64,000 nucleotides of DNA from Tubulanus polymorphus (Eukaryota; Animalia; Nemertea): NCBI RefSeq assembly GCF_964204645.1, contig NC_134035.1, forward strand, positions 6,781,101-6,845,100. Reading direction: 5' to 3'. This document shows, piece by piece, positions 702 to 18,785 of this stretch. The number at the start of each line of letters is the position of its first letter. Within the stretch, counting starts at the first letter, position 1. A program made the translations under genes and the position numbers. The notes under the pieces are model-generated. The model saw only the letters and a program-made list of their open reading frames with translations. It searched no databases and was not told where the DNA came from.

Positions 702-790
702 AAGTGAGATTATACCGACCGTAAAGTCTCCGTTTAACGGTTGCGCATTAAGTGCTGGGAATCCGTAGACTGGTTCCCAGTCTCTACGTG

Positions 791-2074
791 GCAAAAGGTA
801 GAAAGTTTCTTTTGTCCAATGTCGTATAGCGCCGCCGCGGTCGAAAATCGAACTAATCTGTCAAGTCGATAATTTTTTAAGTGAGAAGACGCCGCGTTCA
901 GTTCGCGGTACACTGTACGTACAGTTTTTCGATACACTGCTGTTCAACAAATTTGTTTTGTAGTTGAAGTTCACAGCGCGCTATTCAGTTTTCAGAAGTA
1001 GAGGGCTAAAATAACATCATTCGTAAGATCTCAGATTGAATATTTTCATCAGATTCAGAGCTCAGTTCATTGTATAAAATGTGTCATTTCATGTATAAGA
1101 CAGTTACTTCTATTACTCTGACAGAAGTTTTTATGTCATAATTTTTTTACCTCATGTGTAACTCAATTATAGCAGAGTTATCAATTATTCATTTATAAAT
1201 AAATTAGTATTATTAATTTAATTATTTGATTGATTATTATTAAGAGATATGACATTATAAACATATATATAATGCACAGATATGGATGTTATATATAATG
1301 CAAAGATATGGATGTTATAATGATAATGTATTTCTACTCGCATAGAAATGAGACTAAAGTTTTCCTGTTTGGATATTCTAAAAGCCTATAAGTCCTTTGC
1401 CAAGGATATGAATGGTTTGTGATGATATTATGTTAACTAAATTCATTTGTTGGTTGAACGATTTCAATTAATATCGCAATATTTAGCATTCGTGATATAA
1501 TTAATATGATAGAGATATGGCCATTTGTCTATTGTTTATGTTAGCAAAAGTTTGCATTTGATATAGAAGGCTTTAATGTTTTGATGTATGGTTGAGATTT
1601 TCAAAATAAATGTTATGCTTACATGAGATAATTGGAACTAGATGTTTTATTTCATTTTTATCAAGTATCGATGGATGAGAAGTCTTTCGACGATGTGCAG
1701 TTAGCCCATTAGAGTTTGCCTTAAAATACTTTACTCTCAGTCTAAGCTGAATTTAATTCATACCGCCGTTACAGTACCATAAAATTCACACAAAATCTTT
1801 AGCGTAATTGGAATAGGACGTCCCCTGTTTCACATCCGGCAGGTGTGTTGACGGTGGGTAAGTTTATTAAGGTACACCAAATCTATTAAAACGATCGCTA
1901 TTTTAAAATCAAATCATCCCGAAGAAATTGGGGATTCGTACCTATCGGATATATACTGGTACTCGGCGTCTTTCCACTTAACAAAACATCGTCAATAACA
2001 TTAGTTCTTATTATTGTTAAGTAGCGGCGCTACCGGTACTGTCGATCGGACATTAGAAACTTTCTACCTTTTGC
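791..2074. mobile_element. Non-autonomous TIR element (MULE/Merlin-like) with 9-bp TSD
   Basis: TIR GCAAAAGGTAGAAAGTTTCT (791-810) matches AGAAACTTTCTACCTTTTGC (2055-2074), with weaker inverted similarity for about 100 bp further. CTCTACGTG flanks both sides (782-790, 2075-2083). AT-rich non-coding interior. Confidence 0.8.
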
Positions 2075-2290
2075 CTCTACGTGTTATGCGCCAAGTGGGA
2101 ATATCGTGCCAAGTAAGAATTATCGGCGGAAGTGCATGCCAGAGTATGAATCAAAATGCAAACAACATCCTATACTGAAACGTTGGCAATAGTAGGAGGC
2201 GCCACGGATACTTGCGCCAAGTTGGAATAACTTTTTCGACAAGTTTCGACTCAGCGATTTAACAGTTTTTTTCAGTTTTCAACATACAAT

Positions 2291-5200
2291 ATGATGTTCT
2301 TAGGTTCTACTGCTTGGGCATATTCTAAGAGGCCTTCAAAATACACTCGTGGTCTTGCTAATTATGGGCAGTCTTGTTATATGAACAGCGTTATTCAATC
2401 GGTTAAGTGTGTAGCAGAACATTTCAAACTGTTCTCTAAAAAGTCCGCAGAAAGCCAGAATTCAATGGAGCTTTTCAATAGATGTCGTAAGTATATATAA
2501 AGCCCATTTTGAAGGCTTTAAAGAATGGAAGTGGATATTTTGCCAATAATGCAGCATTATTTTAGTAAACCAAGTGGCTATTCGTACAGACACGTACGAA
2601 TAATTCCGTAGGCTATTCGTACGCGCCCGTATGAATAATTCCGTAGGCTATTCGTACGCACTCGTACGGATTACTGTGGAATTATTCATACGGTCAGGCT
2701 AGTCAAAACATTCGGCTGACTGTCAGTGAGCTCAGTGGTCTAGTGGTATGATGCTGTGCTAGTTATTTACTGGCCCAGGTTCGAGTCTCGCTTGATCCAC
2801 TCTATTGTTCTCTAACTATATTCTCCACACTTTCCTTGAATGGCGGGCGTTTATCGGCCAATCAGCGACAGTTATTAGCGTACAGATCCTTCACCCACTG
2901 GCAGTGGTTGTCTCCACCAGTGATCTCCGTCGCTCTACGATCCTAGTGTAACCAATCCTGTGGTACATCAGACACTAAGATTCTTGGTGAAACAGATCCT
3001 AGTTCCGTATGAATAGCCTCCAGGGTAATCCGTACGGGTCCGTACGAGTAGCCACAGCGATATGCTATTTTGCCAATGCACAATGGCTATGAAATGTAAC
3101 AATAAAATCGCGCCGGTTAGGGTGAGGTTTAGCCACTTAAGTGTCCGTTATTACCCATAGAGTTTTGGTAAAGGTGAGGCTGTAGTGAAAAATTACGGGT
3201 AGTTGTCAGTGAGCCAAGTGGTCTAGTCTAGTGGAAAGACGTTAGGCCAGTAATCTGGTGGTCCGGGTTCGAATCCCACTCTAGTCTATGCTCTTATTTT
3301 GTCTAGGCTAACTCTGTTCTCCAAACTTTCCTATGCAGCCGCAATTAGTCATTCAGAACGCGCCATTGGCAAAATAGTGTTAAGAGGAATAATACCGCAT
3401 TGGCAAAATATTGGCTGCCTTTCTTATTATTAGACTATGTCATTTTTCCAATGACTTGTTTTGATTGCCTAATTGATGCTGCGCAAATGCAAAACTTTGA
3501 AAATTCAAGAAAATTTGAACAGATTTAGAGAAAATAGAGCGGGATTCGAACCCGGACCAGTGTATATATCCTCTAAATATAAATATAAAATACGTTCTTG
3601 CAAACTGGCTGTAAGTTTTCAATTCATATAGCATTCAACGTATCGTATCTCAACCTTACCCTAACCCTTTCATCTCTCTAAGTGTAAAACGGACCCTTAA
3701 ACTAACCCTAACTCCCTGGGCCCGGTTTTACATACAGGGATTAAGCCTCTAATTTGGGTTAGTTGCCCAATTCGAATAAAAATTTTTAGGTTAATTTTCG
3801 ATGCCCATTTCAAAAATGCAAATTAAGATATTTATCATATATCACCTACACATTTTTAGATTTAGGGCCTATTGAAAATCTCATTGGAGAAAGAATTGCA
3901 AAGAAAATACGGAACGATCAATTATACAATTTCATTGTACAACCAAAAAATCCTACGATATTTATGAATGAAACCTTGTTCATGTTATAGGACTAATGCA
4001 TTATGGGCAACTAATTCAGAATTATCTGAGATAATTTGAATTGGTTAATTTTTCGCTAATTTGCGTTAGTGAAACAGATTTAATCATCAAATGATCTATG
4101 CCTAATTCGAAGAATTTTTGATTATCACCTTCGAATTCGAAGTTAACTGGCGTTCGTGAAACGACCACCGGTATTCAGACTAACTATAGATACCATATAG
4201 CCTATGCTATTATGATATATCTAACTGAAATATTTATCATCATCTATATATATTATTTTAAGTATCGCTACTTTTCAGCTGCACCAAAATATACGGCCCC
4301 GTGACTTGACTTGGATGTCATTTGGGGCAGAGCCCTGTGAATATCAATGCCTGAGGAATAGCCTAATGCATATCGGTTCAATTTTAGTCAAGTTACCTAG
4401 GCATATTTTTACCACAATTGCAAAATTGTCACCACTTTGCAAAATTGTAGCTCATGATGAGTTCTATGATTGGATATATAGGCCTAATCATCATCATCAA
4501 ATTTCGGTGAGGAGCCATAATTTGACTTTATGCTTAGCCCATATAAAGGATGGGTACCGGTATATATGTTATCCTATGTGTATGACAACCTCCCTCTCCT
4601 GACTTGACGCGATGGAACTGAGCGCAGGAATACCAGCCAATTAGAGACCGAATGATCATAGTACAAATTTTGATTGCTACATTAGTGTCATTTGTATCAT
4701 GTCACAAATATTTACCGGTAATTTCAAGTAGTTTCAAACGCAAACCAAACGTCCAGCATTGCAGTTGACTGGACTAAAGATCTAGAAACGAAATTGGTAG
4801 AATTACGTAGTGAGCGGCCATCTTTATATGATGTCGCTTACACATTGTATTCAAAACAGAATCAGAAAGATAAAAGTCTTAACGAAATTGCTTTTCAACT
4901 GGAAATATATTTCGCAATTCAAAATAATTTAAATCTATCCTCAAAATGCTCATGACCATGTGATCCAGTGCAGTTGCCAGTAATCGGAACCGGACAAAAG
5001 CAGGGAAGCAACTGGGAGGATCTCATATCCCGCTAATCAGCCTCAAGCCAGCCTTAAGGGTGGGATGATAGTTAATTTGTCTAATCGTCTCACAGCCAAG
5101 CATTCCTATTGTTCATAGAATTGACACATAACATCTTTGATTTAGAGGTAAAGCAGGATAATTTCACCCAGACACTGGAGGATCTGTGTCTAGTTCTGCG

Positions 5201-8200
5201 AAGTACATCAGCAAATATTAGTCATGTAGTGAATCCTAGTGCCATGAAATGTCTTTTGCCTAGTAAGTATTTACTTTGATCAAAATTTCTCATTATACTG
5301 CAATTTTTAGTCCTTTGAAATAAAATATCTCTAATTCATAAACTAGATTAGTTGTGTAATTTGATAATTAAAGTGTTTTTGACCTAATGTTTATATTTCA
5401 ATTTCCTTTTCCTGACAGAATAATGGCAAAATGGTTGGTATATTATATAATCTTCCTATTTGTTTTTCATCAATTTTCTTTGCTTCACATTGTCTATGTA
5501 AATACTCTACACATATAGGCTTCATCTCAGGGTATTAAGTATTAAGTAATCCACATGATTATGTCTCATTACAATGCAAATGCTTTTTAACCCACTTGGG
5601 ACTTAAATCCTAGCGGGCCTAATTTGTTCACTTTTCATTCATTGTTTGTAGACAGGCCCCAGTAATTTGTGGAAAATTGAACTGTAATTGATGCTTCAAT
5701 GGTTTGTTTTGATATTAGGTTAATAGCTACTTTAGATGCATCTGGAGCCAAAAACTGGCCTGATCAAATTCCAGATGGCTGGCTGGGAAATCTTGAATAT
5801 GCTTCAATGAAGTTCCTTGATATTTTGACAAAAAAAGGTCACTTGTGCCCTGAATTCTGAGACCTGTAGCTTCCTAATGGTAGTGATTATGGTTTGCCAT
5901 TATAATGTGCTGAAATTCGTGCTGGGTGAGTTTCAAGGTACATAATTCGTTTCTGAGTATGATCACCAGGCGAATAACGGAATAATGTGGTATTTGATTA
6001 TTTTCAGATTGTCAAGCATTTCGCCAGTAGGCGTGGTGTCCTAGTTGTGTGGTTGCACCAAAAGTCTTTTTTCACCTTATTGCAGCGATTTAGGAAAACA
6101 TTTTATGTGCCTATCTCAGGAAAAGTGATCAGATGGGCTTATACTAGGAATAGCCTGTATCAAACACTTTTGATATGATATTTAATTATAGTATGATTTC
6201 TTGCCAAACCAATGACAGTCACATAGGCGTTATTTTCTTGGAAATTCCATAGGTATCCCCTAATTTTGAGTAGGGTCTTAAATGACTAATGTCTATTTAT
6301 TAATTGATGAGACCTGTTTTTCTGGGATATTTTGCTTACTTTTTGGGGTACATACCTCATTTATGTCTTATCAGAATGCCAAAAATCGCGGACAACAACT
6401 GAATATCCGATATATTTCCAGTTCTGTACCAATTAGATGGATTGGCAAAAAGACTCCTTAAGTCCAATTGAATGAGAGAGAAAATCCTCCATTTTGTCAA
6501 ATTTCTTGGATTTGAACATTGTTACCATGCCTACGCCACCCTGATTTAGTTGTTGAGACCCCACAAGAAAAATAACTTCATTTCGTAGGCATGGTGACAA
6601 TGTGAAAATTCAAGAAATTTCACAAAATGGAGGATTTTCTCTCTCATTCAATTGGACTTAAGGAGTCTTTTTGCCAATCCATCTAATTGGTACAGAACTG
6701 GAAATATATCGGATATTCAGTTGTTGTCCGCGATTTTTGGCATTCTGTTAAGACATAAATGAGGTATGTACCCCAAAAAGTAAGCAAAATATCCCAGAAA
6801 AACAGGTCTCATCAATTAATAAATAGACATTAGAGCCTCATTGCCACTTGCTTCTGTATCTGAAGACTTTGAGGTGACCACAATGACCAGTGCAAATTGA
6901 ATATTTCACTCCTATTTCATCTGTTTTCTGTTTTATATATGTTGCTTCGCTTCATGACTTTTATGCTATTCATGTATGTTATACACTACTATGATCAAAA
7001 TATGTAGGTGATGTCTCGAGGAATGAGACCCTTGCCTATCTGTTCTATAATGAAGAGCTGGATGGTTTGGTGTTCATACACAACCGTGGTGAACTGGAAA
7101 AAAATGTGGTTTTGCTTCTTTCTCACTTCTTTCTTCAACTTTCCTTTACTGAACCAAACTGATTTTCACCCCATTTTATCTTAGATATAGGGCTCTACTC
7201 AAGACGTCAGTGTGATGCCCATGAGTTCTTCATTCGTTGGATGAGTAAAATTGAAGATGAAAATTCAAGGTAAACAAAATGAATGAAGCAACGAGCGAAT
7301 GAACGAATGCAATTATGTTTATACTTATCAAAAAATTGAGGCTAGATAGATGATGAATATAATGTGTGTTTATTTTTTCAGTTCTGATTTTAAACAGATT
7401 GTTAAGTTTTCCATGGTTCTCTTCAAACAAAAGGTATTTTAAGTAGCAAAGCTTTTCAAGCAATGATTCATTCATTTTTACTACACTTAATTTTCACATC
7501 AGTAAGCCCTGTTTGAATATTTTATGACTTTCTCTTTCAGTCATCTGTAGATCCTGTTCTACTGAATCAACACTAACTGATGGATTCACAAACCTCAGTC
7601 TATCACTTGGGGTGTGTAGCTGTGTTTTTGGTCCCTTAAACCGCTGAATATTTCTATATGTTTCCTATAAATAGTTCCTATATGACATTTGAGATTTTCT
7701 TTGTATTTCAGAAGGATAAAGGAAAAGGAGTCACAACCCTTGTCTCGTTACTTAATTCATATTTTTGTAGTGAGGAACTGGATGACTATGAGTGTTCCCA
7801 GTGAGTTTGTTATGTTTATTTCATGTAGTGATCATAAGTACTGATTCCATATTTATAGGTATTATCTTTTAGCTATGATTTCATTTCCATCGTTTTTCAT
7901 TGAAGTTGCAAATTAAAGGTTGCAAGGAAATCTACTAAACCTTTGAAGGCTCCTGAATGTTTAGCTATTCAAATTAACAGGTAAATACTTAATCTGTCAA
8001 TTTGCTTAAACTGCTTTTGTGTAACTGAAAACACATTTTTTGAGGCACCCTGTAGAATGATATTTTACGCATGGCATACGGTATGAACAGTATCTCTAGA
8101 ATTGATTGGTGGAGTTATAACTAATAGACTGTCTTGTCCTTTTAAGATTCAGTAAGACATTGGAAAAAAGAAATGATTTTGTGAGATTTGATGAAGTTCT

Positions 8201-8865
8201 TAGCTTCCACAACGAGGTATGCTCATTTACTGAAGATATTCTAGTTTTTTAGGAATACTGCACATAAATAACACTGTCACATATTTTTCAGAATTTTAAA
8301 CTTTGCAGTGTTGTGGTTCATCAAGGCTCTTCTTTGGAAGGAGGACATTATATATCTTTTGTTTGCGATATTGATGGTAAATGGTTTGAAACAAATGACA
8401 GTAAGGTACTGTAAATCCATTGATCATTTGCAACCAGGAATATTTTATCATTTATTGATTATTCATCAGACACCTGGCAGCTATGTCTTGAACATGAGTC
8501 AGATAACTAAGGCGAATCACCATTCTGACGCAGCACCTAATTCTTTAATCTGGTTCATGCCCATTCTGTCACATTATATAACAAAAACCAATGCAAAATG
8601 TGCAATTACAGGCAAAAGTGACTCAAAAGTTTTATTATCATAAAATAATCGCTGCGGACAAACCCTTTGGAACCACAGGAGCTCTATATGAAAAACAAGC
8701 ATACATCCTGTATATTTTTGTCATAATATCAAATGAGGACAGAGAAGTTAGTTCCGTTCATTTGCACAATATAACGTAACTTAATCTTTATTTTAGGTAT
8801 TGAGAGCCAATAAGGATTGGGTCCTATCCCAGAATGCTTACATGCTATTTTATATAAAAGTACCA
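2291..8865 (+). CDS. Ubiquitin-specific protease (peptidase C19/USP) catalytic domain, multi-exon; N-terminal part of a probable USP-integrase fusion
   Basis: Manual GT-AG exons: 2291-2401 (Cys box RGLANYGQSCYMNSVIQS), 4279-4300 (tentative), 5146-5262 (VVNPSAM), 7185-7269 (RQCDAHEFF), 7382-7433 (FHGSLQTK, needs +1 nt at T-run 7407-7410), 7541-7611 (CRSC...FTNLSL), 7712-7800 (EELDDYEC), 7906-7980 (PECLAIQINR), 8147-8216, 8292-8405 (His box VVVHQGSSLEGGHY...WFETNDS), 8797-8865 (NAYMLFY). All USP boxes are in the correct order. The true start is uncertain. Confidence 0.88.
2727..2798 (+). repeat. tRNA-derived (SINE-head-like) sequence
   Basis: A-box TGGTCTAGTGG and B-box GGTTCGAGTC at tRNA spacing. 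No convincing cloverleaf. Related copy at 3205-3290. Confidence 0.55.
3205..3290 (+). repeat. tRNA-derived (SINE-head-like) sequence
   Basis: GTCAGTGAGCCAAGTGGTCTAG...GGGTTCGAATCCC, homologous to 2727-2798. Confidence 0.55.
6286..6833. mobile_element. Foldback (palindromic) non-autonomous DNA element, about 250-bp arms
   Basis: CTAATGTCTATTTATTAATTGATGAGACC... is a near-perfect inverted copy of ...GGTCTCATCAATTAATAAATAGACATTAG, with an about 48-bp spacer. Near-identical copy at 39833-40384. Confidence 0.9.
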
Positions 8866-8916
8866 GTATGTGTTCTTTCTTATTTTGTCATATAATATTC
8901 AACTTTATGTAGTTAA

Positions 8917-9214
8917 CCCTTAACTTGCTGCAGGCTACTGAGTCGACACACTGGGGATCTGCCGTAGGCAACTGTAGTCAATAGCCCGGCCTATCTCGCA
9001 TTAAAAGATTGTTTTTATGTCACAAGCGCCTCGCAGCGCGTTGAGCCTCTTAAGACATGGCAACTGCCTATACTCGTGAATCCGAACCCGGAAGTGATTT
9101 CACTTTTCGCGCTGGGCCCCCAAAAATGACCCCACCCAGTGTACCCCCTCTTTCAAAAATCGGAAGTTTAATTTCATCAACATGCAAATGATCTTGCTGC
9201 CAGAAGGTTAAGGG
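8917..9214. mobile_element. piggyBac-type MITE
   Basis: TTAA|CCCTTAACTTGCTG ... CAGAAGGTTAAGGG|TTAA: TTAA TSD and CCC/GGG termini. Confidence 0.85.
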
Positions 9215-9249
9215 TTAAACTCGCCAGTAATGCAGGATACAACGGTAAT

Positions 9250-9797
9250 TAGGATTTAGGATGTAATATATATTTTCAATGAGTCTAAATATTATTTTTC
9301 AGACAAGGACAACGGCAGATAATTCACACCAACCCGATCCTCAGGTATGTGAAACATTTTACACGTTGATTTTTCTTAAAATGTGTCATTACTTGGAATT
9401 TAGGATGCAGTATATATTTGTAATGAGTCTAAATATTATTTTTCAGACAAGGACTACGGCACATAATTCACACCAACCCGATCCTCAGGTATGTGAAACA
9501 TTTTACACGTTGATTTTTCTAAAAATTTGTCATAACTTGGAATTTAGGATGCAGTATATATTTGTAATGAGTCTTAATATTATTTTTCAGACAAGGACTA
9601 CGGCACATAATTCACACCAACCCGATCTTGAGGTATGTGAAACATTTTACACGTTGATTTTTCTAAAAATGTGTCATAACTTGGAATTTAGGATGCAATA
9701 TATATTTGTAATGAGTCTAAATATTATTTTTCAGACAAGGACTACAGCAGATAATTCACACCAACCCGATCCTCAGGTATGTGAAACATTTTACACG
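9250..9797 (+). repeat. 144-bp tandem repeat (about 3.8 copies); each unit is a 42-nt phase-0 exon plus a 102-nt intron
   Basis: TTTCAG|ACAAGGAC...GATCCTCAG|GTATGT at 9303-9344, 9447-9488, 9591-9632 and 9735-9776. Each encodes a TRTTADNSHQPDPQ-like peptide. Confidence 0.85.
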
Positions 9798-10432
9798 TCG
9801 CCCAGCCGCCCCTGTATGTGTTTATGAGTTGTAGGTTTAGATGTTGTATTTTGGGTGTCGGAAAATGGTCGGTTTCATGTGGAGATCAGTGTGACTTGTT
9901 TGAATCTTGAATCTTGCAATGGAGTCTGATCATTTTCACACCTTTAGATTATTGTATCGCTATGAAATTGTATGTGATGGCTAAGGATTAGAATGTTATT
10001 ACCGGGTACGTATATTTCTAATTATTCCATCCATCTGGGGCCCAGTTTCACAAAAAGGATTAAAGCCAAAATCGATCAAAAAAAGATAAACTGAATTAAT
10101 GAAGAAATTAAATCGATTTAAGAGTTAAAACTTTTTGTGGAACTTGGCGGCCCATTTTACTCTACTTTATTAGTGCGAGGATGTAGTGTATCATGCTAAA
10201 TTTCAGTAGGCTAGGCCTACTTGTATCCAGTCATGTGCAATATGTACATAGGATTATTAAACTAAGATGAATGTATAGTTCTCTACTCATTTATGAATTG
10301 TATTCTTTTTTATTCGCATATTTTATTTGTAAAATTGTAAAATGAACAAGTTAACTATGAAATAATAATCGATATATGTTAAGTTTATAATTCTTCTCGT
10401 TTTCACTGTCAGGAGAGGAGGAAGCCAATGCC

Positions 10433-10612
10433 TAACGAGAGAAATCCCAGAATAGAATCAGCCCAAAATGAAAAGTTCTATAGCAAAGTGGTATATATTT
10501 TGAGCAACATATATGCTAAATACTATTAGCCATAGATTATACCGATGTATATAGAATTTTACTCAAGAACTTAACATTTTTGGCTGAATCTATTGTGGGA
10601 TTTCTCTCATTA
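10433..10612. mobile_element. Short MITE-like inverted-repeat element
   Basis: AACGAGAGAAATCCCAGAATAGAATCAGCC is an imperfect inverse of GGCTGAATCTATTGTGGGATTTCTCTCATT. TA at both ends. Confidence 0.5.
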
Positions 10613-11233
10613 TTCATATTGTTTATCTTTCAAGACTAAGTCTCTTTTGATTTGCTTATTTTATGTGTGAGACCATAGTAAGTGAGGGCAAGTCAAAGAG
10701 GCTGGTTGCAGTAGTGATGTGCTGGAGGCATTTGGAATGACACTACACCTCCGAGGACCAGAGAAGTAGGAGCCGGTGTTTGGATGACTGATCTCGTATC
10801 TTGTCAAGGACCCTGACTTGATTGAGTACCTGGCAGACAGTCGTCCTGATTGGTCAAGTGACTTCATTTAGATAATGTAGTCACCTGGGAAAGATTTCGC
10901 ACTCATCTCGGACACTAGTTTACCCCTTTTAGACCTTTTATTCCTGGAGTCGGCCATTATTCATTCATCAACCTTCAGAGGATGACATTTTCCCTTTTCA
11001 CTACCAGTCCTCTAGTTCATGGAGTTTCATCGATGTTCATTGCTGCATTTGGTTGAATGACTGGACTGGTTCCAGACGTACTCTGATTGCGCACCTAGTT
11101 TTTAAAGATTATAGCCCTTGATTTTTTTCCTCTTACACTCGCTTGTGTGCATCCATATTGAACTCACTTGTGTGCATCCATATTTGAATGTAGTTTATAG
11201 TTTTGTCAACCCTCTACATTTTATATTTGATAG

Positions 11234-14200
11234 GCCTCAAACAGTCGCACTAAAGCTTCTGTGTCATGTGATCACATGCCAGATGATGATAAGTATGTTT
11301 TGAGAAATGACGTTTCCACTGAGACATGCTCATTAGAAAACTAGAATTTCATCCCATGTTAATGATAGATTTTCAGATACAAATCCTATAGATCATTCAG
11401 AGAAAGCACATGACTCTGCTAAGAAAGCATCATCTAAGTAAGTCTATCTATGAAACTTATTATATTCTAAAAGGTTTTTCAGGAAAAATTTCAACAGGTC
11501 TTGATAGTCTTAATGTTTAATAATTGACTGCATTATCGTAGGATACATCTCCTTGCTCGGAATTGTGGTCTTTTGTTCTCTCCCCACCACGGATAGTTTG
11601 ATATTAAATTTAATATTTTCCCTTTATATTGGTACGTATGCATATTTTGTTAACCCAATCAATTGCACATTGGTAGCCCATGATATGGTATGGTTATGTT
11701 GAGTTAGAAGGCGATGGCTTCTGCTATATGTTAACCATGGAATATTATGGTATATATGCTCAATTGATTGGCACTATGGCATTTAAAAGTCAGTGTCATT
11801 CATCTATTGCTGTATTTGTTCATCAGGGGGTGTTGAATATTGAAATTTTGGCTGTCAAATATTTTTCGAAGTTGTCAGTTTAACTAGTTTAACCAAGAAA
11901 ACTTTATTGATTAAAAAAAGAGCACAATTGGTACAAAATATTATTCAATGCCCACAAATGCTGGTGGTTAAACCTAAGAATGGCTTATGGTTCAGTTTGT
12001 TTTAGGATACAAAATTGTTCATTTTATTACGTAAGATACTTGAGACTAAAAGCTGGCCAATTTATTCGCTACAATAAATTTTCATTCATTTTATAACAGA
12101 ATTACAGATGATGTGAAAAGATCTGATGTGAAAAAAAGAGGTAAGCTAAGATAGCATGGGTTATTCAGATACATTCTCACCTTTGTTTTATAAAATACCT
12201 TTGTTTTATAAAATCAGAAATGATTTCCTGGTGGGAATGAATCTTTTTCCTTACTGCTAGGCCACAAATTAAAATGATTGGTTTCATAAGGCATTAGGCC
12301 TATGTATGAATGTGAATAGAGGTGTTTCATTTTTTAGTCAAAAAAAGCTCGGTTATGGATAAAGAATATCTGGATGTTGTCGAACAGTTTCTTGAAAACC
12401 CAATGCATCCAGATGTTAAGAATTATTTTCCCAACAGCCAAAGCTTAGCCAAATTCCGACATCAGGTAAATGTTCTCGTTGTGAATGCTTGACGACTTGT
12501 ATCACTACAATTTTCTCATAATAGAACTGATTTATGAAGTGATGCTTCGTCTTATTTTGCAGGTCAAAACCAAAGGTTTTACTTTAAAAGAGGAGGAAAA
12601 CGGTGATAAGAATGTAGTTGCACCATGCAAAAGTGATGTACGTATCTTACATGGAAAATATCATTTTATTGCAGTATGTACAGAAGTTATTCATTAGCTC
12701 CAAATGGGTTGTTTCAGGTTTCAAGGAAACTCAGAGTTATCCCTTTGGAAGATTTTGATCAAATCATATTATCCTGTCACGAGGCTATTGGGCATGGTGG
12801 AGAGAATGCTACATTTAAAAAGGTAAAATTATTCCCTGAGGTTTTAGTTAATCATATCTTTAATCACTTATTCAAAAGATCAACTTTCAGGTTCAAGAAA
12901 ACTACTTCGGTGTCATTCGAATTCATGTAAGGAATACCTTGAAAAAATGCAAAGTGTGCACACTGAAATCATCGCAAACTGGCAGAGCCCCAGTCATTCC
13001 GATCATTAGCCAAAATGTATTCGAAAGAATTCAGGTAAGACATAACTTTTATTTAAGGTCTGAGTACTATTATCGTTAATTCATACATGTATATTCATTT
13101 CAGGTTGACTTGATTGATATGCAACGTCAAGAAACAGAAGGTTATCGCTTCATATTGCATGCTATTGACCATGCCTCCAAATTTCATTTTCTGTGGCCCT
13201 TGAAGGGAAAATTTGCGACTGATGTGAAAGATGCTCTCAGGATCCTATTCAGTTTTACTGGGCTACCCAAAATTCTTCAATGTGATAATGGAGGTGAATT
13301 TTCTGACCGGGAACTGGGTGATCTTCTGTCTGAATGGCCCTCCAGCTGTAAAATTGTCCATGGTAGACCTCGTCATCCCCAGAGCCAGGGCTTAGTAGAA
13401 CGGGGTCATCGTATCGTGGCTGATAAAATTGCCTCATTCAAAGCGTCTTTCACTGGAAAAGGAGAATTTCCATGGCATCATTATTTACCACGAATTATGT
13501 GTAAGTAAAATTGAACACGATATCTTGATTAATTCATAATATGCTTCCCCTATATGCTCAATGTTTTTTGCTTCTTTAGATATGATCAACACTACGTATT
13601 CCACACGAATAAAATGTACCCCCTATGAATGTGTGTATGGGCAAAAACCCCCAAATATTGCACTTCAGGTAAAATTTGTAGTTACTTCAGCAAATGGTAT
13701 TTATATCATTATTCAGTCCTTATAAGAAATTGTATTTGATTTCAGTCAAATGAACATAATGACGAAGAGGAGGGCAATGCAGAAGTATGTACTAATACTC
13801 ACTAAAATCTATTTTAGGGCAGGGCTGTAGGAACCGGGGAGCCATGCCCCCCCCCCCATTTTCTGACTCTTGCCTATGACTTCCTACATGCCTAGGGTAG
13901 GTCTCCATAGTACCTAGTGGCAGAAATGGTGAAACTGTGAGCTTATATCATTCCTAATTTCAACCAGGAAGTACTCAGAATGTACCTAAATGATATAATT
14001 TTTCAAAATTTTATGACCATTTAGTGCTTTGTGCCTGCTACGCCGTCATTATGGGCCACAATTCGTTCCTATGGCCCTGTAGGGTGTAGTAAGAAATTAA
14101 GTTTCAAATACAGTAGTATCACAAAGTCAAAATACCTTTCAAAATTAATCAACATCTTGTAAACAGAGCCAGGCTGTAGATATTATCTTTATGCATGTTT

Positions 14201-15007
14201 TTTTTATAATACTTACCAAGTATCAGTAATCCATATTCTTTTTCATAGGACATAACAATTCAGAGTGATGAAGATATTACGGTGTGTACATGCTTGATTG
14301 ATTATCTTGTGTATATATTCGATTTAATTTTAAATACAAATATGTCTATCTCATCTCCTGCAGAATAAGGCTCATTGAAATCTTGTCCTGAGAAAAGATA
14401 ACTGCCAACTTGCATTTTATAAAGAGATACTTACAGTATTTCATTAATGTAAACTTTGTGGCATTTCTAAGAGATGTATATTTAAAAAATTAACAATTTT
14501 TCAAGTGTCAGAAAATCGACATTTATTGCAAGTGCAGTGTTTACCAATTTTCATATCTGTATATCACTCAACTTTTTTCAGATGGAACCAAATGCCTCAA
14601 CCACTTCGCAAGTAAGCCTTTTTAACAATGCACAAAACTTGTCACTTTGCTATAACCTAAACTCTACTTACTACATTTGGCCTTATTTTAAGCTGGCTAA
14701 CCAATGCACCACTTCCATTCTAGGGATTTGATTTTAGTGAGCTGCCAATAAAGAGAGTTAAGGTTGCTAATGAGCTAGCAACTAAGGAAGCTCACCAAAA
14801 AATTAGGATGGCTGCTAACCTTGCCTCCTTAAAAGGCGCAAAAAGGATGTTGAAAAGGGGATACAAAGAACAACTAATATTCAAAGTTGGGGATTTTGTA
14901 ACGGTGAAAATTCCTGAGCAAGACCGCCACAAAATAGATCTACGTAGACTCCCTGGTGTGGTAGTCCAAGTGAAAAAGTTTAAGAATGGAAACTTTTATA
15001 TAATACG
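11234..15007 (+). CDS. Intron-containing DDE integrase/transposase, Ginger2/TDD (KRBA2/SCAND3-like): H2C2 Zn finger + rve core + C-terminal domain; 3' end truncated
   Basis: Phase-consistent exons 11234-11292, 11369-11437, 12100-12140, 12338-12465, 12563-12637, 12718-12822 (CHEAIGHGG), 12891-13034 (CKVC), 13104-13500 (VDLID...QCDNGGEF...GRPRHPQSQGLVER), 13580-13668 (TPYECVYG), 13746-13784, 14249-14281, 14582-14611, 14724-15007 (FKVGDFVTVKIP..DR). No stops in the assembled frame. No RT, gag or LTR nearby. Confidence 0.88.
13820..14079. mobile_element. Short non-autonomous TIR element in an integrase intron
   Basis: CAGGGCTGTAGGAAC ... GTTCCTATGGCCCTG, flanked by TAGGG on both sides. Confidence 0.55.
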
Positions 15008-16955
15008 GTTTGTCAGATAATTTCATAAATCGTAAAGCAAAAATGGTTGATTTTATGTTGATATCTTACGTTGATATGTTAAGAAAATATATAAGTCGAC
15101 GTCAACATCATTTCAACGTAGAAACAATGTGACAAATTTCTCAACGTTTTTCCAACGTTGAATTAAGGTTGTGTGCTAGCTGGGTATGCAGAATTGGATT
15201 CATTGTTATTATAGGATGATAGTTCATGGGCATCAAAAGTGCTACAACATGCCCTTGATATGAAGCTTTTTAAAGTTTATCAGACACGTGTTTTGGAGTA
15301 AACCGAATAGCCCTTAAAATACCGATTCCACATGGTTTAACGGTCAGTGTCTATGCTCTGCGAGACAGTAGTCATATATTTTTCACGACAAACGCACGAT
15401 TTAAATTGGTCTCCTAAGGTATCTATTATACTTTCTTTCACTTCTCTATTATATTACATAACTGAGTAATTCTTACATTGGATTGCCTAATTACAGGTGG
15501 AAAGAGGTCAGATGGCATGAAAATCGACTGTGGCTGATTAATTGGCGCGTGTATATAAAGCGTCGAGGTTTCAAAAGGTGTAGCCAAAACGCTTCTATCA
15601 TCAAGGGTTGACAAATTATCCGAAGATAAATGAAAACTTCACCTTAGTTGTTGATCGTCAGTTGATTTTGTTGTAATTATTTCGTCTGGATAAATCGACA
15701 CATAATTCATTTCAAAATCTGTGTTCAGTAGATATTCTTTCAATAAAATAAAGATCTATTTGACTAATTTCTGACTAATGTATTCAAGAGTGGATTCGAA
15801 TTGATCTCAAAACCAGAGAAAGCATTCTTCAAAAAATTAGAAGATCCTAGACTCATATATATAGCCAGTAAAAATTGTCTTGAACTCATCTCGATAATCT
15901 ATAAGATAGATCACACAAATTCTTATAAATCAGGTATATTCCTAATTCATTTTAAGTTCATAATTGCCACTGAATTTTACCAATACCGGTATACCACTTG
16001 GAACGTGCATAAATACAAATAGTTATTATTCATCAATGAATTGTTCACCAATTAACTTTTTCTCTGTGGAAAGAACAAAGGCGAACCTCTGAACCTGTGA
16101 GCAAATAAGAACATAAATGATTACCCATATTATAAGCTGAAAGCATCATTAGGTAACCTTGATAAAATAAGGAAGTTTGCTTACCAGGAAAGATGGATTC
16201 AACAGCATTAATTTAACAGCATTAATTGCCCTTGAAAAATCGGTCAGAAAATCACTTGGATGCCATTCAGGATTCCATTTAGTGAACACACCAACAGGAT
16301 GCTTGATTCGTTACTCGGAAAATCGCGGATAAAAAGGATTCGGTGCCCAAGTTGACTTTTCATAAGTGTTCGACATGTGAAAAAATGTTTGTTTCCGTAG
16401 AGCTGATAAAAAAACATAAATGTTATGGTGAGTCCTTATATAAGACAAAGCTAAATACGTGCAGAGTGGTTGTGACACGTATCCACGTATAGTCTTTGAA
16501 AATTGTCATGTCGTCTTAATCACAATCTACCTTTCAAGGCTTGGCCTGGCTTATCTCTTCTATTTTGCTGTCAAACAAATATGACATTTAATGTATTACA
16601 TTTCATTATAATTCTTCTTTTTTTCTTTCATTAAGCAGTTGCCTCACGCGCTCAACTTCAATCAAGATTACAAGCCAAAGCAGCTACATTTGCAGTGCCT
16701 TCTCAACAAGGAACAAAGCCGGAAATAGAATTACAGTTCCAACAAGAATCTGAAAGACCGGCACGGTCTGGCATGAGCAGTAATGAATCCGAAAATGGCC
16801 AGGTTCCAATTGACAATAAGCCTATATGTTCTTATGATTACAACAGTGTTGGTTGTGGTATGTAGGTCTATCTAGGCTTTGCTTCTCTCCCTGACCCTTC
16901 CATATCCGACATCTTGATCTTTACATGATTTTAACAAATTTCTTATTCCATTTCA

Positions 16956-17368
16956 GATGACATTGCTACATGGAAAAGAACAGAGTCACTTCTTCTGATT
17001 GACATATATCGAGAATGGGAGCCAAAAATCAAGAAAAAATGGCCCTGTGGGAAAAAATAGCACAATTGATGTTGGCCAAAGGTTATAAATTTACTTGCGC
17101 ACAAATAGAAAACAGATGGAAGACCCTTGTGTGAGGTTTGAAAAAAGTAAGTGACCACAATTCAAAAAGTCACGTATGCCCGACACACCCATTCGAAAAT
17201 GAAATGGAATTTGTGTTCAAACGTCAAGCCTCAGCCTCATTATGTTGCAGGTTCAACCATAGACGAAGAAACTTTTGCCTCAGAAATCAGCGAGTCGAGG
17301 ACTGAGCGAGATGAGACCCCCACCACCAAAGAAGAGAAAATTGAACGTCTCCCAGGTATAAGATGTAC
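16956..17368 (+). pseudogene. Myb/SANT (trihelix) DNA-binding protein of a Harbinger transposon, disrupted
   Basis: After acceptor TTCAG: ATWKRTESLLLIDIYREWE...(frameshift)...ALWEKIAQLMLAKGYKFTCAQIENRWKTLV*GLKKVSDHN...PFENEM, the typical W...W...W trihelix pattern. Convergent with the transposase. Confidence 0.75.
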
Positions 17369-18785
17369 TCAATGAGCACATGACAAGAAGTCATTTATAT
17401 CGTCATTGATACAGATATTATGGAATATGCAACAGACTATTATTGCATCAACTGCAGTTTTATTTGACTTGGTGTCTATGATTTTAAGTCTTCGAAATCT
17501 ACCCTTCAATAAACCAAATGCTCTTTCGATGGGAACCCTTGCCGAAGAAAGTCTATGATTAAAACGACGCTGTCTACGAGTTAGGTGTCCATTGTCACGA
17601 AAAGGTTTCATAAGACTCTTTCTTAATGGATAAGCACCGTCTCCAACTAGATAATTGTTCTCACCACAGTAGTTGGGTGCAATGTCAAACACATCTGAGT
17701 TTCTAAAAATTCGGGCATCATTCACACTTCCAGGCCAGCCAGCAAGGACATGAATAAATGATAAGTTAGCAGTACAAACACCTTGCAAAACAAGGTTTGT
17801 GTTCTTATATTTAGGATTGTTTCAATTAATAAATTCTCGATTTATTATCTTATCATCCGTTCACCACGTTTGAGTGTGGTTGTCGTACCACCTTGCAAAA
17901 CAATGGAATGATATTTCTTTCGATTAACATACACTTGTGCATGCTCATGTGGAGCTATAATGCTGAAGTGTGTTCCATCTAAAGCCCCAAGTATATTCGG
18001 AAATTGAGAACTTATGAGAAATTCATCTTTTATTTTGTTCTTCGCAAATCATCGAAAGGTAATTGTATGAACTTTTTCTTCAAATGCGTCATAACAACAT
18101 TAGACACACGATTACTTGATTTAAGAATGGTAGAATCAGTAACACCAAAGCGATCAGCCATTCTATGTATTGTTTCCTGATGGGAAATATACCATATAGT
18201 TATAAGTAACTGTTTTTTGATCGTAATTGGTTTTCTTCCACCACAGTCCTCATTAGGCCTTTGTCTTAAATATGGTCCTATATTCCGCATAATCACTTCA
18301 TATGTAGCTTTAGATATTCGGAAGAATCTGCTAAAATCATCTGCGGTATCGTGGAATTACATTCTCGACGTAGTTTCTACATTATTCCCTATCTTCTGTT
18401 GTTCTAAAAAAAGAAACAAAACATATATTATTGCACACGTAACAATTTAAGGTCTTAGTGATAGAGCTTTAGTGAAAAAATCCGATCGCAAAACTTAACC
18501 ACAGCAAAGTGACAGAACTTACTGCCTAATCTTACTGAATGGAATGAGCCTCTGTTGATGAGGCTGGGAGGAGGTATAGTAGTAGTGTCTTAAAGACGAT
18601 CATTGGCATGTTAGAAGAGATAAGTACGCAAGAATTAGCTCGTAGACTAACATTACTTACATGGTAATAAGCAAACAGCACATGCTAAATGTGTAGCTAT
18701 TAACTTCTGTGTAGAAGGCTTCCTCCGTACATTCTTCCAACAATAATGGGATGAACGATCGAAATAATGCCGCCTTGTCCATCAT
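17369..18785 (-). pseudogene. PIF/Harbinger transposase (HARBI1-like, DDE_Tnp_4), disrupted
   Basis: Motifs KQLLITIWY...DRFGV, FPNILGALDGTH, YVNRKKYHSIVLQGVC, GWPGSVNDARIF, LVGDGAYP, FNHRLSSARVPIERAFGLLKGRFRRL, CCIFHN. Contains frameshifts and an internal insertion. Confidence 0.9.

What the first reader, a model, noticed from the sequence alone, without database searches (positions are those of the whole stretch)
2291..15007. Spliced deubiquitinase-transposase fusion: a USP (C19) domain joined in frame to a Ginger2-type DDE integrase
Seen in sequence: about 28 same-strand GT-AG exons chain with compatible phases. The order is the USP Cys box (GLANYGQSCYMNS), QCDAHEF, Zn-fingers, His box (HQG...GGHY...NDS) and AYMLFY, with no stop before the donor at 8866. 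Phase-0 micro-exons (9303-9776) follow, then bridge exons 11234-11292 (phase 0 to 2) and 11369-11437 (2 to 2), then 12100-12140, H2C2, an intact D-D-E core and a C-terminal domain. Established knowledge: Ginger transposases contain introns, and Ginger1, some MULEs, Zisupton and Helitrons have captured OTU or Ulp1 Ub/SUMO proteases. I do not recall an N-terminal USP-family DUB on a Ginger2/KRBA2-like transposase. Inference: this is either a DNA transposon whose transposase carries its own deubiquitinase (protecting itself from degradation, or removing H2A/H2B ubiquitin at target chromatin) or a domesticated chimeric host gene.
Basis: partly seen in the sequence, partly recalled or inferred. Interest (0 to 1): 0.88.

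Follow-up and report, generated by a model that had tools for sequence, protein, structure and literature searches.

The report
Jumping gene carrying its own deubiquitinase
The window holds a truncated copy of a very young, roughly 23.5-kb Ginger2-type DNA transposon of the ribbon worm Tubulanus polymorphus that carries a ubiquitin-specific protease gene just upstream of its integrase-like transposase gene. The available RNA contigs and the public annotation point to two neighbouring genes, not one fused protein.

Summary
The USP (C19) and integrase (H2C2 + rve) exons are real. The 42-nt micro-exons are real exons, one in each unit of a 144-bp tandem array.

The locus is a mobile element, not a host gene. 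It has TGTT...AACA imperfect inverted ends, exact 4-bp target duplications at four copies, and at least 7 copies or fragments that are 93-100% identical. Full copies measure 23.5 kb. The window copy is cut at 15041: it lacks the last three integrase exons, the right arm and the right end. It also lacks a 328-bp segment that in four other copies holds the integrase's own first coding exon (MSAADPG).

The in-frame fusion is not supported:
- No contig joins 9776 to 11234.
- An RNA contig reads unspliced past 9776 to a stop at 9825-9827.
- RefSeq models of five copies are integrase-only. The "bridge" exons belong to the integrase gene.

None of 75 long integrase relatives carries a USP domain, and I found no report of a USP on a Ginger2 element. 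A second, divergent family in this genome has the same USP-then-integrase layout. The scan noted this USP-integrase pairing before on other DNA (s1-487458).

Verdict: a new variant of a known kind, of moderate interest.

The parts
2082..15041 (+). Left 12.96 kb of a Ginger2-type DNA transposon ('family 1'). This copy is truncated at 15041. Intact copies run about 8.7 kb further.
   Evidence: Similarity to copies on C1, C5, C7, C4 and C8 starts at 2082-2083. C1, C5, C7 and C77 stay 99% alike for another 8.7 kb that is absent from the window.
2078..2081 (.). Flanking TACG, the presumed left half of a 4-bp target-site duplication. The right half is lost with the truncation.
   Evidence: Four copies with both ends have exact 4-bp duplications: GTGG, CCTG, GTGA, TATT.
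2082..2126 (+). Left terminal inverted repeat, about 45 bp and imperfect, starting TGTTA.
   Evidence: Global alignment with the reverse complement of the right end of the C1 copy (L050:5538-5607), which starts TGTTG.
2291..2497 (+). First USP coding stretch: the ATG and the Cys box (GLANYGQSCYMNS). The donor position was not determined.
   Evidence: Pfam UCH, profile positions 1-40, 25.5 bits. The UCH HMM also hits window 2348-2470.
7163..7801 (+). Middle USP exons: the QCDAHEF box (7163-7270) and the Cys-rich finger stretches (7528-7801). Boundaries are approximate.
   Evidence: The motifs are seen in the open frames. They fall below Pfam's reach as single pieces.
8268..8405 (+). USP His-box exon (HQG...GGHY...NDS). 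The 3' boundary at 8405 is RNA-supported.
   Evidence: Pfam UCH, profile positions 196-235, 38.9 bits. Joint 8405>8797 in X4.
8797..8865 (+). Last exon of the USP domain (…AYMLFYIKVP), phase 0 at both ends.
   Evidence: Joints 8405>8797 and 8865>9303 in X4. Sequence.
9254..9798 (+). 144-bp tandem array (3.8 units). Each unit holds one 42-nt exon encoding TRTTA(D/H)NSHQPD(PQ/LE), at 9303-9344, 9447-9488, 9591-9632 and 9735-9776.
   Evidence: TRF output. Sequence and splice sites. Joints 8865>9303 and 9632>9735, plus exon-exon loose ends, in X4. Unit number differs between copies: 4, 4, 4, 5 and about 3.
9777..10111 (+). Read-through past the last micro-exon: a 16-codon tail (VCETFYTSPSRPCMCL), a stop at 9825-9827, and the probable 3' UTR of the USP mRNA. 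ATTAAA occurs at 10059 and 10107.
   Evidence: X4 contig 18 is colinear over 9747-10111 at depth 26. X4 depth is zero at 10200-10399. Sequence.
11005..11010 (.). Site where the C1, C4, C5 and C7 copies carry a 328-bp segment that the window lacks. The segment holds the integrase's first coding exon (ATG...MSAADPG|gt).
   Evidence: X1 and X2 loose ends and X2 contig 12. Alignment of the C7 and C5 copies, and the location of MSAADPG. RefSeq model P0243.
11234..11292 (+). Integrase coding exon 2 (ASNSRTKASVSCDHMPDDD-).
   Evidence: Present in RefSeq models P0243 and P0239. No X4 contig lies on it.
11369..11437 (+). Integrase coding exon 3 (-FSDTNPIDHSEKAHDSAKKASS-).
   Evidence: RefSeq models P0243 and P0239. 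The donor at 11437 is used in X4, whose contig 19 ends at 11409.
12100..12140 (+). Integrase coding exon 4 (ITDDVKRSDVKKR).
   Evidence: Joints 11437>12100 and 12140>12338 in X4. RefSeq models.
12338..13784 (+). Integrase exons with the N-terminal region, the H2C2 finger and the D-D-E core: 12338-12465, 12563-12637, 12718-12822, 12891-13034, 13104-13500, 13580-13668 and about 13746-13784.
   Evidence: X4 joints. Pfam rve and H2C2. Mapping of P0244 and P0243 onto the window.
14249..15014 (+). Integrase exons at about 14249-14281, 14582-14611 and 14724-15014 (C-terminal domain …VGDFVTVKIPEQDRHKIDLRRLPGVV…). The donor is at 15015 and the following intron is cut by the truncation.
   Evidence: Mapping of RefSeq model P0244. 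Integrase relatives align to 14703-15005, and also to the next exon, which is present only in other copies.

Best explanation
Window 2082-15041 is the left 13 kb of a cut-and-paste DNA transposon of the Ginger2 (KRBA2/SCAND3-like integrase) group in the nemertean Tubulanus polymorphus.

Structure (shown). Intact copies are about 23.5 kb. They have imperfect inverted ends of about 45 bp (5'-TGTT...AACA-3') and make 4-bp target duplications. Reading from the left end on one strand, the element carries:
1. A multi-exon USP/C19 deubiquitinase gene. Its catalytic Cys, His and Asn/Asp boxes are intact. Its C-terminal tail is built from 14-residue repeats, each encoded by a 42-nt exon in one unit of a 144-bp tandem array.
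2. About 1.2 kb further on, a multi-exon integrase-type transposase gene (H2C2 finger, D-D-E core, C-terminal Cys-rich region; 561 aa in the RefSeq model of the C5 copy).
3. A right arm of about 7 kb of unknown content, with a weak PHD-like stretch.

Expression (most likely). The two genes are expressed as separate mRNAs. The USP mRNA reads through the last micro-exon donor and ends near 10.1-10.2 kb.

State of the window copy (shown). It is a dead copy. It lacks the last three integrase exons, the right arm and the right inverted end, and it lacks the 328-bp segment with the integrase's first exon.

Function of the USP (inferred, not shown). It acts in trans for the element. It may keep the transposase from ubiquitin-dependent degradation, or remove ubiquitin marks at chromatin or repair factors during excision and integration. 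Bao et al. proposed the same for the OTU and Ulp1 domains of Ginger1.
For: - Mobile element. Sharp shared boundaries with unrelated flanks in 6 copies. The right end was located in 5 copies. Exact 4-bp duplications are GTGG, CCTG, GTGA and TATT. The inverted ends are TGTTA/TGTTG. Copies are 93-100% identical, and internally deleted derivatives lie on C8, C4 and C1b.
- USP always travels with the integrase. The His-box exon lies 4.8-5.6 kb upstream of the integrase core, on the same strand, in 5 copies.
- Domains.
- Ginger2 affinity. The closest named relatives are KRBA2-like and SCAND3-like proteins. Five relatives carry Znf_SCAND3. There is no GPY/F or YPYY motif. TGTNR ends and 4-bp TSDs match Bao et al. 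2010 (PMC2836005).
- Separate genes. X4 contig 18 is unspliced across 9776 at depth 26, against 39 for the 8865>9303 joint and about 7 for a retained intron. X4 depth is zero at 10200-10399 and 10800-11399, and contig 19 ends at 11409.
- RefSeq models. The window's own model XP_074660506.1 starts at MDKEY (12358). It is the only model with the window-specific VVEQF. The C1 model does the same. The C5 model starts at MAFK (11776). The C7 model starts at MSAADPG, in the 328-bp segment, and runs through 11234-11292 and 11369-11437.
- Relatives. Several begin at the position equivalent to MDKEY.
Against: - The chain USP > micro-exons > 11234-11292 > 11369-11437 > 12100 stays in one frame, and all micro-exon donors are identical. 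A splice 9776>11234 would therefore give an intact fusion.
- One joint and 63 loose ends of the reads table were not shown.
- The RNA evidence is assembled contigs of a single run, of unrecorded library type, drawn from several near-identical copies. Contigs can miss rare isoforms.
- The RefSeq models of the five copies disagree at their 5' ends, as expected when reads map to many identical copies.
- The USP exon chain between 2500 and 8200 was not verified.
- The role of the USP is pure inference.
- The observed target duplications are not the AT-rich RTATAY targets reported for Ginger2.
Confidence: 0.62

Rival explanations
1. One spliced mRNA joins the USP to the integrase. The donor of the last micro-exon (9776) splices to 11234, giving a USP-linker-integrase polyprotein, either as the main product or as a regular alternative isoform beside the integrase-only mRNA.
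For: - All junction phases fit: 8865, the micro-exons and 11234 are all phase 0.
- 8865>9303 and 11437>12100 are used in RNA.
- The MSAADPG exon also ends in phase 0, so 11234 can accept either upstream exon.
- A Mutator element in the same genome is reported by an earlier follow-up to make a spliced USP-transposase mRNA (s1-506667).
- Ginger1 transposases carry OTU or Ulp1 in the same ORF.
Against: - No contig shows 9776>11234. X4 contig 18 passes the donor without a branch, which a spliced path of any depth would have caused.
- No X4 contig lies on 11234-11408.
- All four 5'-complete RefSeq models are integrase-only with their own ATG. This includes the intact C5 copy, where a fused ORF would be open.
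- The C7 copy has a stop inside micro-exon 2.
- None of 75 relatives of 300 aa or more, and none of the 90 hits of a profile search, has a UCH domain.
Confidence: 0.15
2. The USP is a passenger: a host gene picked up by the element and carried along without any role in transposition.
For: - DNA transposons do capture host genes.
- The nearest integrase relatives elsewhere have no USP.
- The copies are too young (99-100% identical) to show purifying selection.
Against: - No close host paralogue exists. The best non-element match to the His-box exon in the genome is 41% identical.
- A second element family has the same left-end, USP, integrase order. Its integrase core is only 39% identical, its USP Cys box 38% and its His box 26%.
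- Ubiquitin or SUMO proteases recur on Ginger1, MULE and Helitron-like elements. One metagenomic integrase relative carries Josephin plus Ulp1.
Confidence: 0.2
3. A domesticated, single-copy chimeric host gene derived from a Ginger2 transposase, like KRBA2 or SCAND3.
For: RefSeq names the integrase models 'SCAN domain-containing protein 3-like' and 'KRAB-A domain-containing protein 2-like'.
Against: There are at least 7 copies or fragments on 6 chromosome-scale contigs plus one unplaced contig. They have inverted ends, exact target duplications and 93-100% identity, and they include deletion derivatives.
Confidence: 0.02

Closest known systems
Ginger2/TDD DNA transposons (Bao, Kapitonov & Jurka 2010, PMC2836005)
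   Same: - Integrase-like DDE transposase with an H2C2 finger and no GPY/F or YPYY motifs.
- TGTNR termini.
- 4-bp target duplications, as in the metazoan members.
- Introns in the transposase gene.
- The nearest named proteins are KRBA2/SCAND3-like, which PMC3575427 derives from the Ginger2 clade.
   Different: - Described Ginger2 elements are 2.7-6.7 kb and encode only the transposase. This one is 23.5 kb and also carries a USP gene and a long right arm.
- The inverted ends are short (about 45 bp) and imperfect.
- The five target sites seen (GTGG, CCTG, GTGA, TATT, TACG) do not show the reported RTATAY preference.
Ginger1 transposons with C-terminal OTU or Ulp1 protease domains (PMC2836005)
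   Same: An integrase-type cut-and-paste element that brings along a cysteine protease of the ubiquitin/SUMO system. It also has TGTNR ends and a 4-bp TSD.
   Different: - The protease here is a USP (C19), not OTU or Ulp1.
- It lies upstream of the integrase, and most likely as a separate gene.
- The integrase lacks the Ginger1 hallmarks (GPY/F, YPYY).
- The targets are not CCGG/CCGT.
Helitron-like elements (HLE2/Helentron) with a UCH domain (HELIANO, PMC11417382), and the Trichomonas vaginalis transposase_11 + Peptidase C19 protein cited in PMC2836005
   Same: A USP/UCH-family deubiquitinase stably associated with a transposon.
   Different: The transposition enzymes are unrelated: a rolling-circle Rep/helicase in one case and an IS5-like DDE in the other. 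I found no report of a USP on a Ginger element in the searched library.
Mutator element with spliced USP-transposase in the same genome (earlier scan finding s1-506667)
   Same: Same host, with a USP-family domain on a young DNA transposon.
   Different: It belongs to a different superfamily. There the follow-up reported one mRNA joining both parts; here the evidence favours two mRNAs. I did not test whether the two USPs are related.

Membership tests
Ginger2 DNA transposons | Transposase related to Gypsy-type integrase, with an H2C2 zinc finger and a DDE core | tested here: met
   Pfam rve and Integrase_H2C2 score above their cut-offs on RefSeq models P0001, P0243 and P0244, and rve on window 13080-13505. 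D, D and E lie in the conserved columns of the alignment.
Ginger2 DNA transposons | No GPY/F and no YPYY motif, unlike Ginger1 | tested here: met
   A string search of the five RefSeq models found none. This was a motif search only; there was no alignment to Ginger1.
Ginger2 DNA transposons | Terminal inverted repeats with TGTNR termini | tested here: met
   The left end is TGTTA and the right end (reverse complement) is TGTTG, in an imperfect inverted repeat of about 45 bp. The published range is 45-297 bp.
Ginger2 DNA transposons | 4-bp target-site duplication (metazoan members) | tested here: met
   GTGG, CCTG, GTGA and TATT are exact at four copies.
Ginger2 DNA transposons | Preference for AT-rich RTATAY targets | tested here: inconclusive
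   Only 4-5 sites were seen, and none fits RTATAY well.
Ginger2 DNA transposons | Phylogenetic placement with Ginger2 reference transposases | not tested
   No Repbase reference sequences were at hand. Placement rests on named relatives (KRBA2-like and SCAND3-like, including one from Littorina saxatilis) and on PMC3575427.
USP / peptidase C19 deubiquitinases | Cys box, His box and Asp/Asn box in order, with a Pfam UCH match | tested here: met
   UCH profile positions 1-40 and 196-235 match above the cut-off. The sequence shows GQSCYMNS, GGHY, NDS and QCDAHEF. The whole-domain fold was not tested, because the spliced product was not joined.
USP / peptidase C19 deubiquitinases | Deubiquitinating activity | not testable with these tools
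   This needs a Ub-AMC or Ub-probe assay.
Domesticated integrase genes (KRBA2/SCAND3 type) | Single syntenic copy without transposon ends | tested here: not met
   There are multiple copies with inverted ends and target duplications.

The most novel reading that the evidence does not exclude
Besides the separate mRNAs, the element makes an alternatively spliced mRNA (last micro-exon 9776 joined to exon 11234) that tethers an active USP to the integrase through a repeat linker. USP carriage would then be an old, functional trait of a Ginger2 sub-lineage, shared by the two divergent families in this genome.
Probability: 0.15. Interest if true: 0.7.

Novelty: new variant of a known kind. Interest (0 to 1): 0.5.

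Why it matters
Transposons of several unrelated superfamilies have picked up proteases of the ubiquitin/SUMO system: OTU and Ulp1 on Ginger1, Ulp1 on MULEs, and OTU and UCH on Helitron-like elements. Nobody has shown what these proteases do.

This element adds a USP to the Ginger2 group and is a good test case. It is very young, has several intact copies, and shows both genes spliced in RNA-like contigs. A second, divergent family with the same layout sits in the same genome, and an earlier scan note reports a Mutator-USP there too. That makes the ribbon worm a natural system for asking whether a transposon-borne deubiquitinase stabilises the transposase or edits chromatin or repair marks.

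For annotation, the locus should be masked as a transposon and not listed as a USP or 'SCAND3-like' host gene.

Tried and rejected
- Joined product left out. Phases were checked exon by exon.
- UCH + rve architecture. The 150 best representatives for the integrase core were collected. A Pfam scan of the 75 that are 300 aa or longer found no UCH. A profile search gave 90 hits, none with PF00443. An alignment of all 150 was over the size limit.
- The look-up of encoding contigs for P0001 and P0244 returned no record. Records of this genome seem to be withheld, so the RefSeq USP model and its neighbours could not be seen.
- PDB sequence search. The His-box exon gave only generic USP matches (Ubp6/USP14, USP36, Ubp8, USP47, USP18). 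The Cys-box exon gave none.
- Right arm. Pfam on ten open stretches of the right arm gave only a weak PHD-like hit.
- Family comparison. Comparing the two families exon by exon found only the Cys box, the His box and the integrase core. It says nothing about the linker.
- The right end of the second family was not reached.
- RNA run X5 held nothing of the stretch.
- The idea that the micro-exons are merely a minisatellite was rejected once the RNA joints were seen.
Full report
**What is in the window.** The + strand between 2291 and 15014 carries exons of two protein families.
- Pfam UCH matches the Cys-box stretch 2291-2497 and the His-box stretch 8268-8411, both above the family cut-off. The UCH model run over the whole genome marks the same two places.
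- Pfam rve matches 13080-13505. The H2C2 finger is weak on a single exon but clear on the public gene models.
My first guess was a minisatellite, but each unit holds a 42-nt segment flanked by ...TTTTTCAG and GTATGT.

**Organism.** A near-identical protein in the public collection is XP_074647573.1 of the nemertean Tubulanus polymorphus, on a contig of 32,063,560 bp. That is the length of contig C1 of this assembly.

**It is a transposon, and the window copy is broken.**
- The integrase core exon and the USP His-box exon each occur in several 98-100% identical copies. In five places they lie 4.8-5.6 kb apart, in the same order and on the same strand.
- All copies start to be alike at window 2082-2083, after unrelated flanks.
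- On the right the window diverges at 15041. The copies on C1, C5, C7 and C77 continue together at 99% identity for another 8.7 kb, of which nothing is found in the window.
- The common right end is ...GGCACGCAACA.
- The two ends form an imperfect inverted repeat of about 45 bp, beginning TGTTA and TGTTG.
- Four copies are flanked by exact 4-bp duplications: GTGG, CCTG, GTGA and TATT.
- Full copies measure 23,522 bp (C1) and 23,635 bp (C5). Copies on C8 (14.3 kb), C4 (16.0 kb) and a 93%-identical one on C1 carry internal deletions.
- These features match the metazoan Ginger2 group: TGTNR ends, a 4-bp duplication, and an integrase with H2C2 and DDE but no GPY/F or YPYY motif.
- The size and the extra gene do not match. 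Described Ginger2 elements are 2.7-6.7 kb and encode only the transposase.

**RNA evidence.** One run, X4, behaves as RNA. Its contigs are spliced at GT-AG sites and leave introns empty.
- Joints seen: 8405>8797, 8865>9303, 9632>9735, 11437>12100, 12140>12338 and five more inside the integrase. Loose ends correspond to the other micro-exon junctions.
- The third junction, 9776>11234, was not seen.
- Instead, a 365-nt contig runs colinear with the genome from inside the last micro-exon to 10111 at depth 26. The 8865>9303 joint has depth 39 and a retained intron about 7.
- In that reading the frame ends after 16 more codons, at 9825-9827. ATTAAA signals follow at 10059 and 10107.
- X4 has no depth at 10200-10399 or 10800-11399.
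- The 1689-nt integrase contig ends exactly 29 nt upstream of the 11437 donor.
- A spliced branch at 9776 of any appreciable depth should have broken the read-through contig.

**Public gene models.** The integrase models of five copies could be retrieved.
- The model of the window itself, XP_074660506.1, is recognisable by the window-specific VVEQF. It starts at MDKEY (12358) and is integrase-only.
- The C1 model starts at the same Met.
- The C5 model (561 aa, complete) starts at MAFK, an exon at window 11776-11788.
- The C77 model is 5'-partial at 11234, because the contig ends there.
- The MSAADPG exon lies in a 328-bp segment that the C1, C4, C5 and C7 copies carry at window 11005-11010 and that the window lacks. 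DNA runs show the same segment as loose ends.
- The "bridge" exons are therefore coding exons of the integrase gene, which has its own start. This also explains why the frame is open upstream of MDKEY. By chance that would happen about 12% of the time over 30 codons and 2% over 54 codons.
- The C5 model also shows that the gene continues past the window's break with three more exons (TKYGVL..., a Cys-rich region...KYGA). Integrase relatives align to that missing part.

**Weighing fusion against two genes.**
- For a fusion: every phase fits, and either the micro-exon donor or the MSAADPG exon could feed exon 11234 in frame.
- Against a fusion: the read-through contig, the empty stretch, the 5' end of the integrase contig, and four complete integrase-only models, including that of the intact C5 copy.
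- Limits: contigs from one run and computed models on multi-copy DNA are not proof. One joint of the table was not shown.
- I put a regularly made fusion at about 0.15.

**How unusual is it.**
- None of 75 long integrase relatives and none of 90 profile hits has a UCH domain. One metagenomic relative has Josephin plus Ulp1.
- Published cases: OTU and Ulp1 on Ginger1, a C19 peptidase on an IS5-like transposase of Trichomonas, and UCH on Helitron-like elements.
- I found no report of a USP on a Ginger2 element.
- The genome search with the UCH model led to a second family (C5, C31, C3 and a deleted copy on C1). Its left end is TGTTGGAG, followed by USP exons and then an integrase whose core is 39% identical to this one. 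So the layout is not a one-off.
- Earlier notes of this scan list the same USP-integrase pairing on another piece (s1-487458) and a Mutator-USP in the same genome (s1-506667).

**Function.** Nothing here shows what the USP does. The catalytic boxes are intact. There is no close host paralogue: the best other match to the His-box exon is 41% identical. The association recurs in a second family. From this I infer a role for the element, most simply protection of the transposase or removal of ubiquitin marks during excision and repair, as proposed for Ginger1 proteases. A passenger role remains possible.

The USP exon chain between 2500 and 8200 is unverified.

Noticed in passing
L056:1856 to beyond L060 (G000:C5:12456856-12476000); copies on C31, C3 and C1:7639401-7651328: A second, divergent family of large elements with the same layout. 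The left end is TGTTGGAG. The USP Cys box is at L056:3434-3658 and the His box at L056:6731-6841. The integrase open frame is at L057:3803-4564, and its core is 39% identical to the window's. The element is longer than 19 kb, and its right end was not reached.
   Followed up: partly
window 11005-11010, versus L061:577-904 (C7): The window copy lacks a 328-bp segment present in four other copies. The segment holds the integrase's first coding exon. The site is flanked by a 6-bp overlap. The second half of the segment resembles a dispersed repeat (75-94% identity at many loci).
   Followed up: yes
window 790-2075: A 1.28-kb repeat with 30 or more copies at 92-99% identity, ending 6 bp before the transposon's left end.
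   Followed up: no
window 6285-6527 and 6592-6833: A pair of inverted arms of about 240 bp (MITE-like) inside a USP intron. They are also present in the C8 copy and at C10:2042500.
   Followed up: no
window 10038-10136: A very high-copy short repeat. Its DNA-run depth is about 60 times that of its neighbours. It also breaks the RNA contigs.
   Followed up: no
window 17015-17788: A Harbinger/PIF-type element: DDE_Tnp_4 on the minus strand (17369-17788, E = 1e-26) and a Myb/SANT-like stretch on the plus strand (17015-17134).
   Followed up: no
window 15173-15400: A high-copy repeat (86-93% identical at 35 or more loci) just past the truncation point of the transposon.
   Followed up: no
C7 copy (L033, reverse strand, unit 2 of the array): One micro-exon of the C7 copy has CCTTAG in place of CCTCAG. 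That is an in-frame stop in the USP tail.
   Followed up: yes
G000:C4:26324953-26325882 and C2:24203117-24204046: Two identical intronless open frames of 1758 aa, each with a full UCH domain. This may be another USP-bearing mobile element.
   Followed up: no
P0206 (1278 aa, ENA metagenome): An integrase relative that carries both Josephin and Ulp1 (Peptidase_C48) domains after H2C2 + rve. This is another deubiquitinase type on an integrase-type protein.
   Followed up: partly
L048:2955-3329 (C1 copy, right arm): A weak PHD-like open stretch about 1.8 kb beyond the stop of the RefSeq integrase model. The 7-kb right arm is otherwise unassigned.
   Followed up: partly
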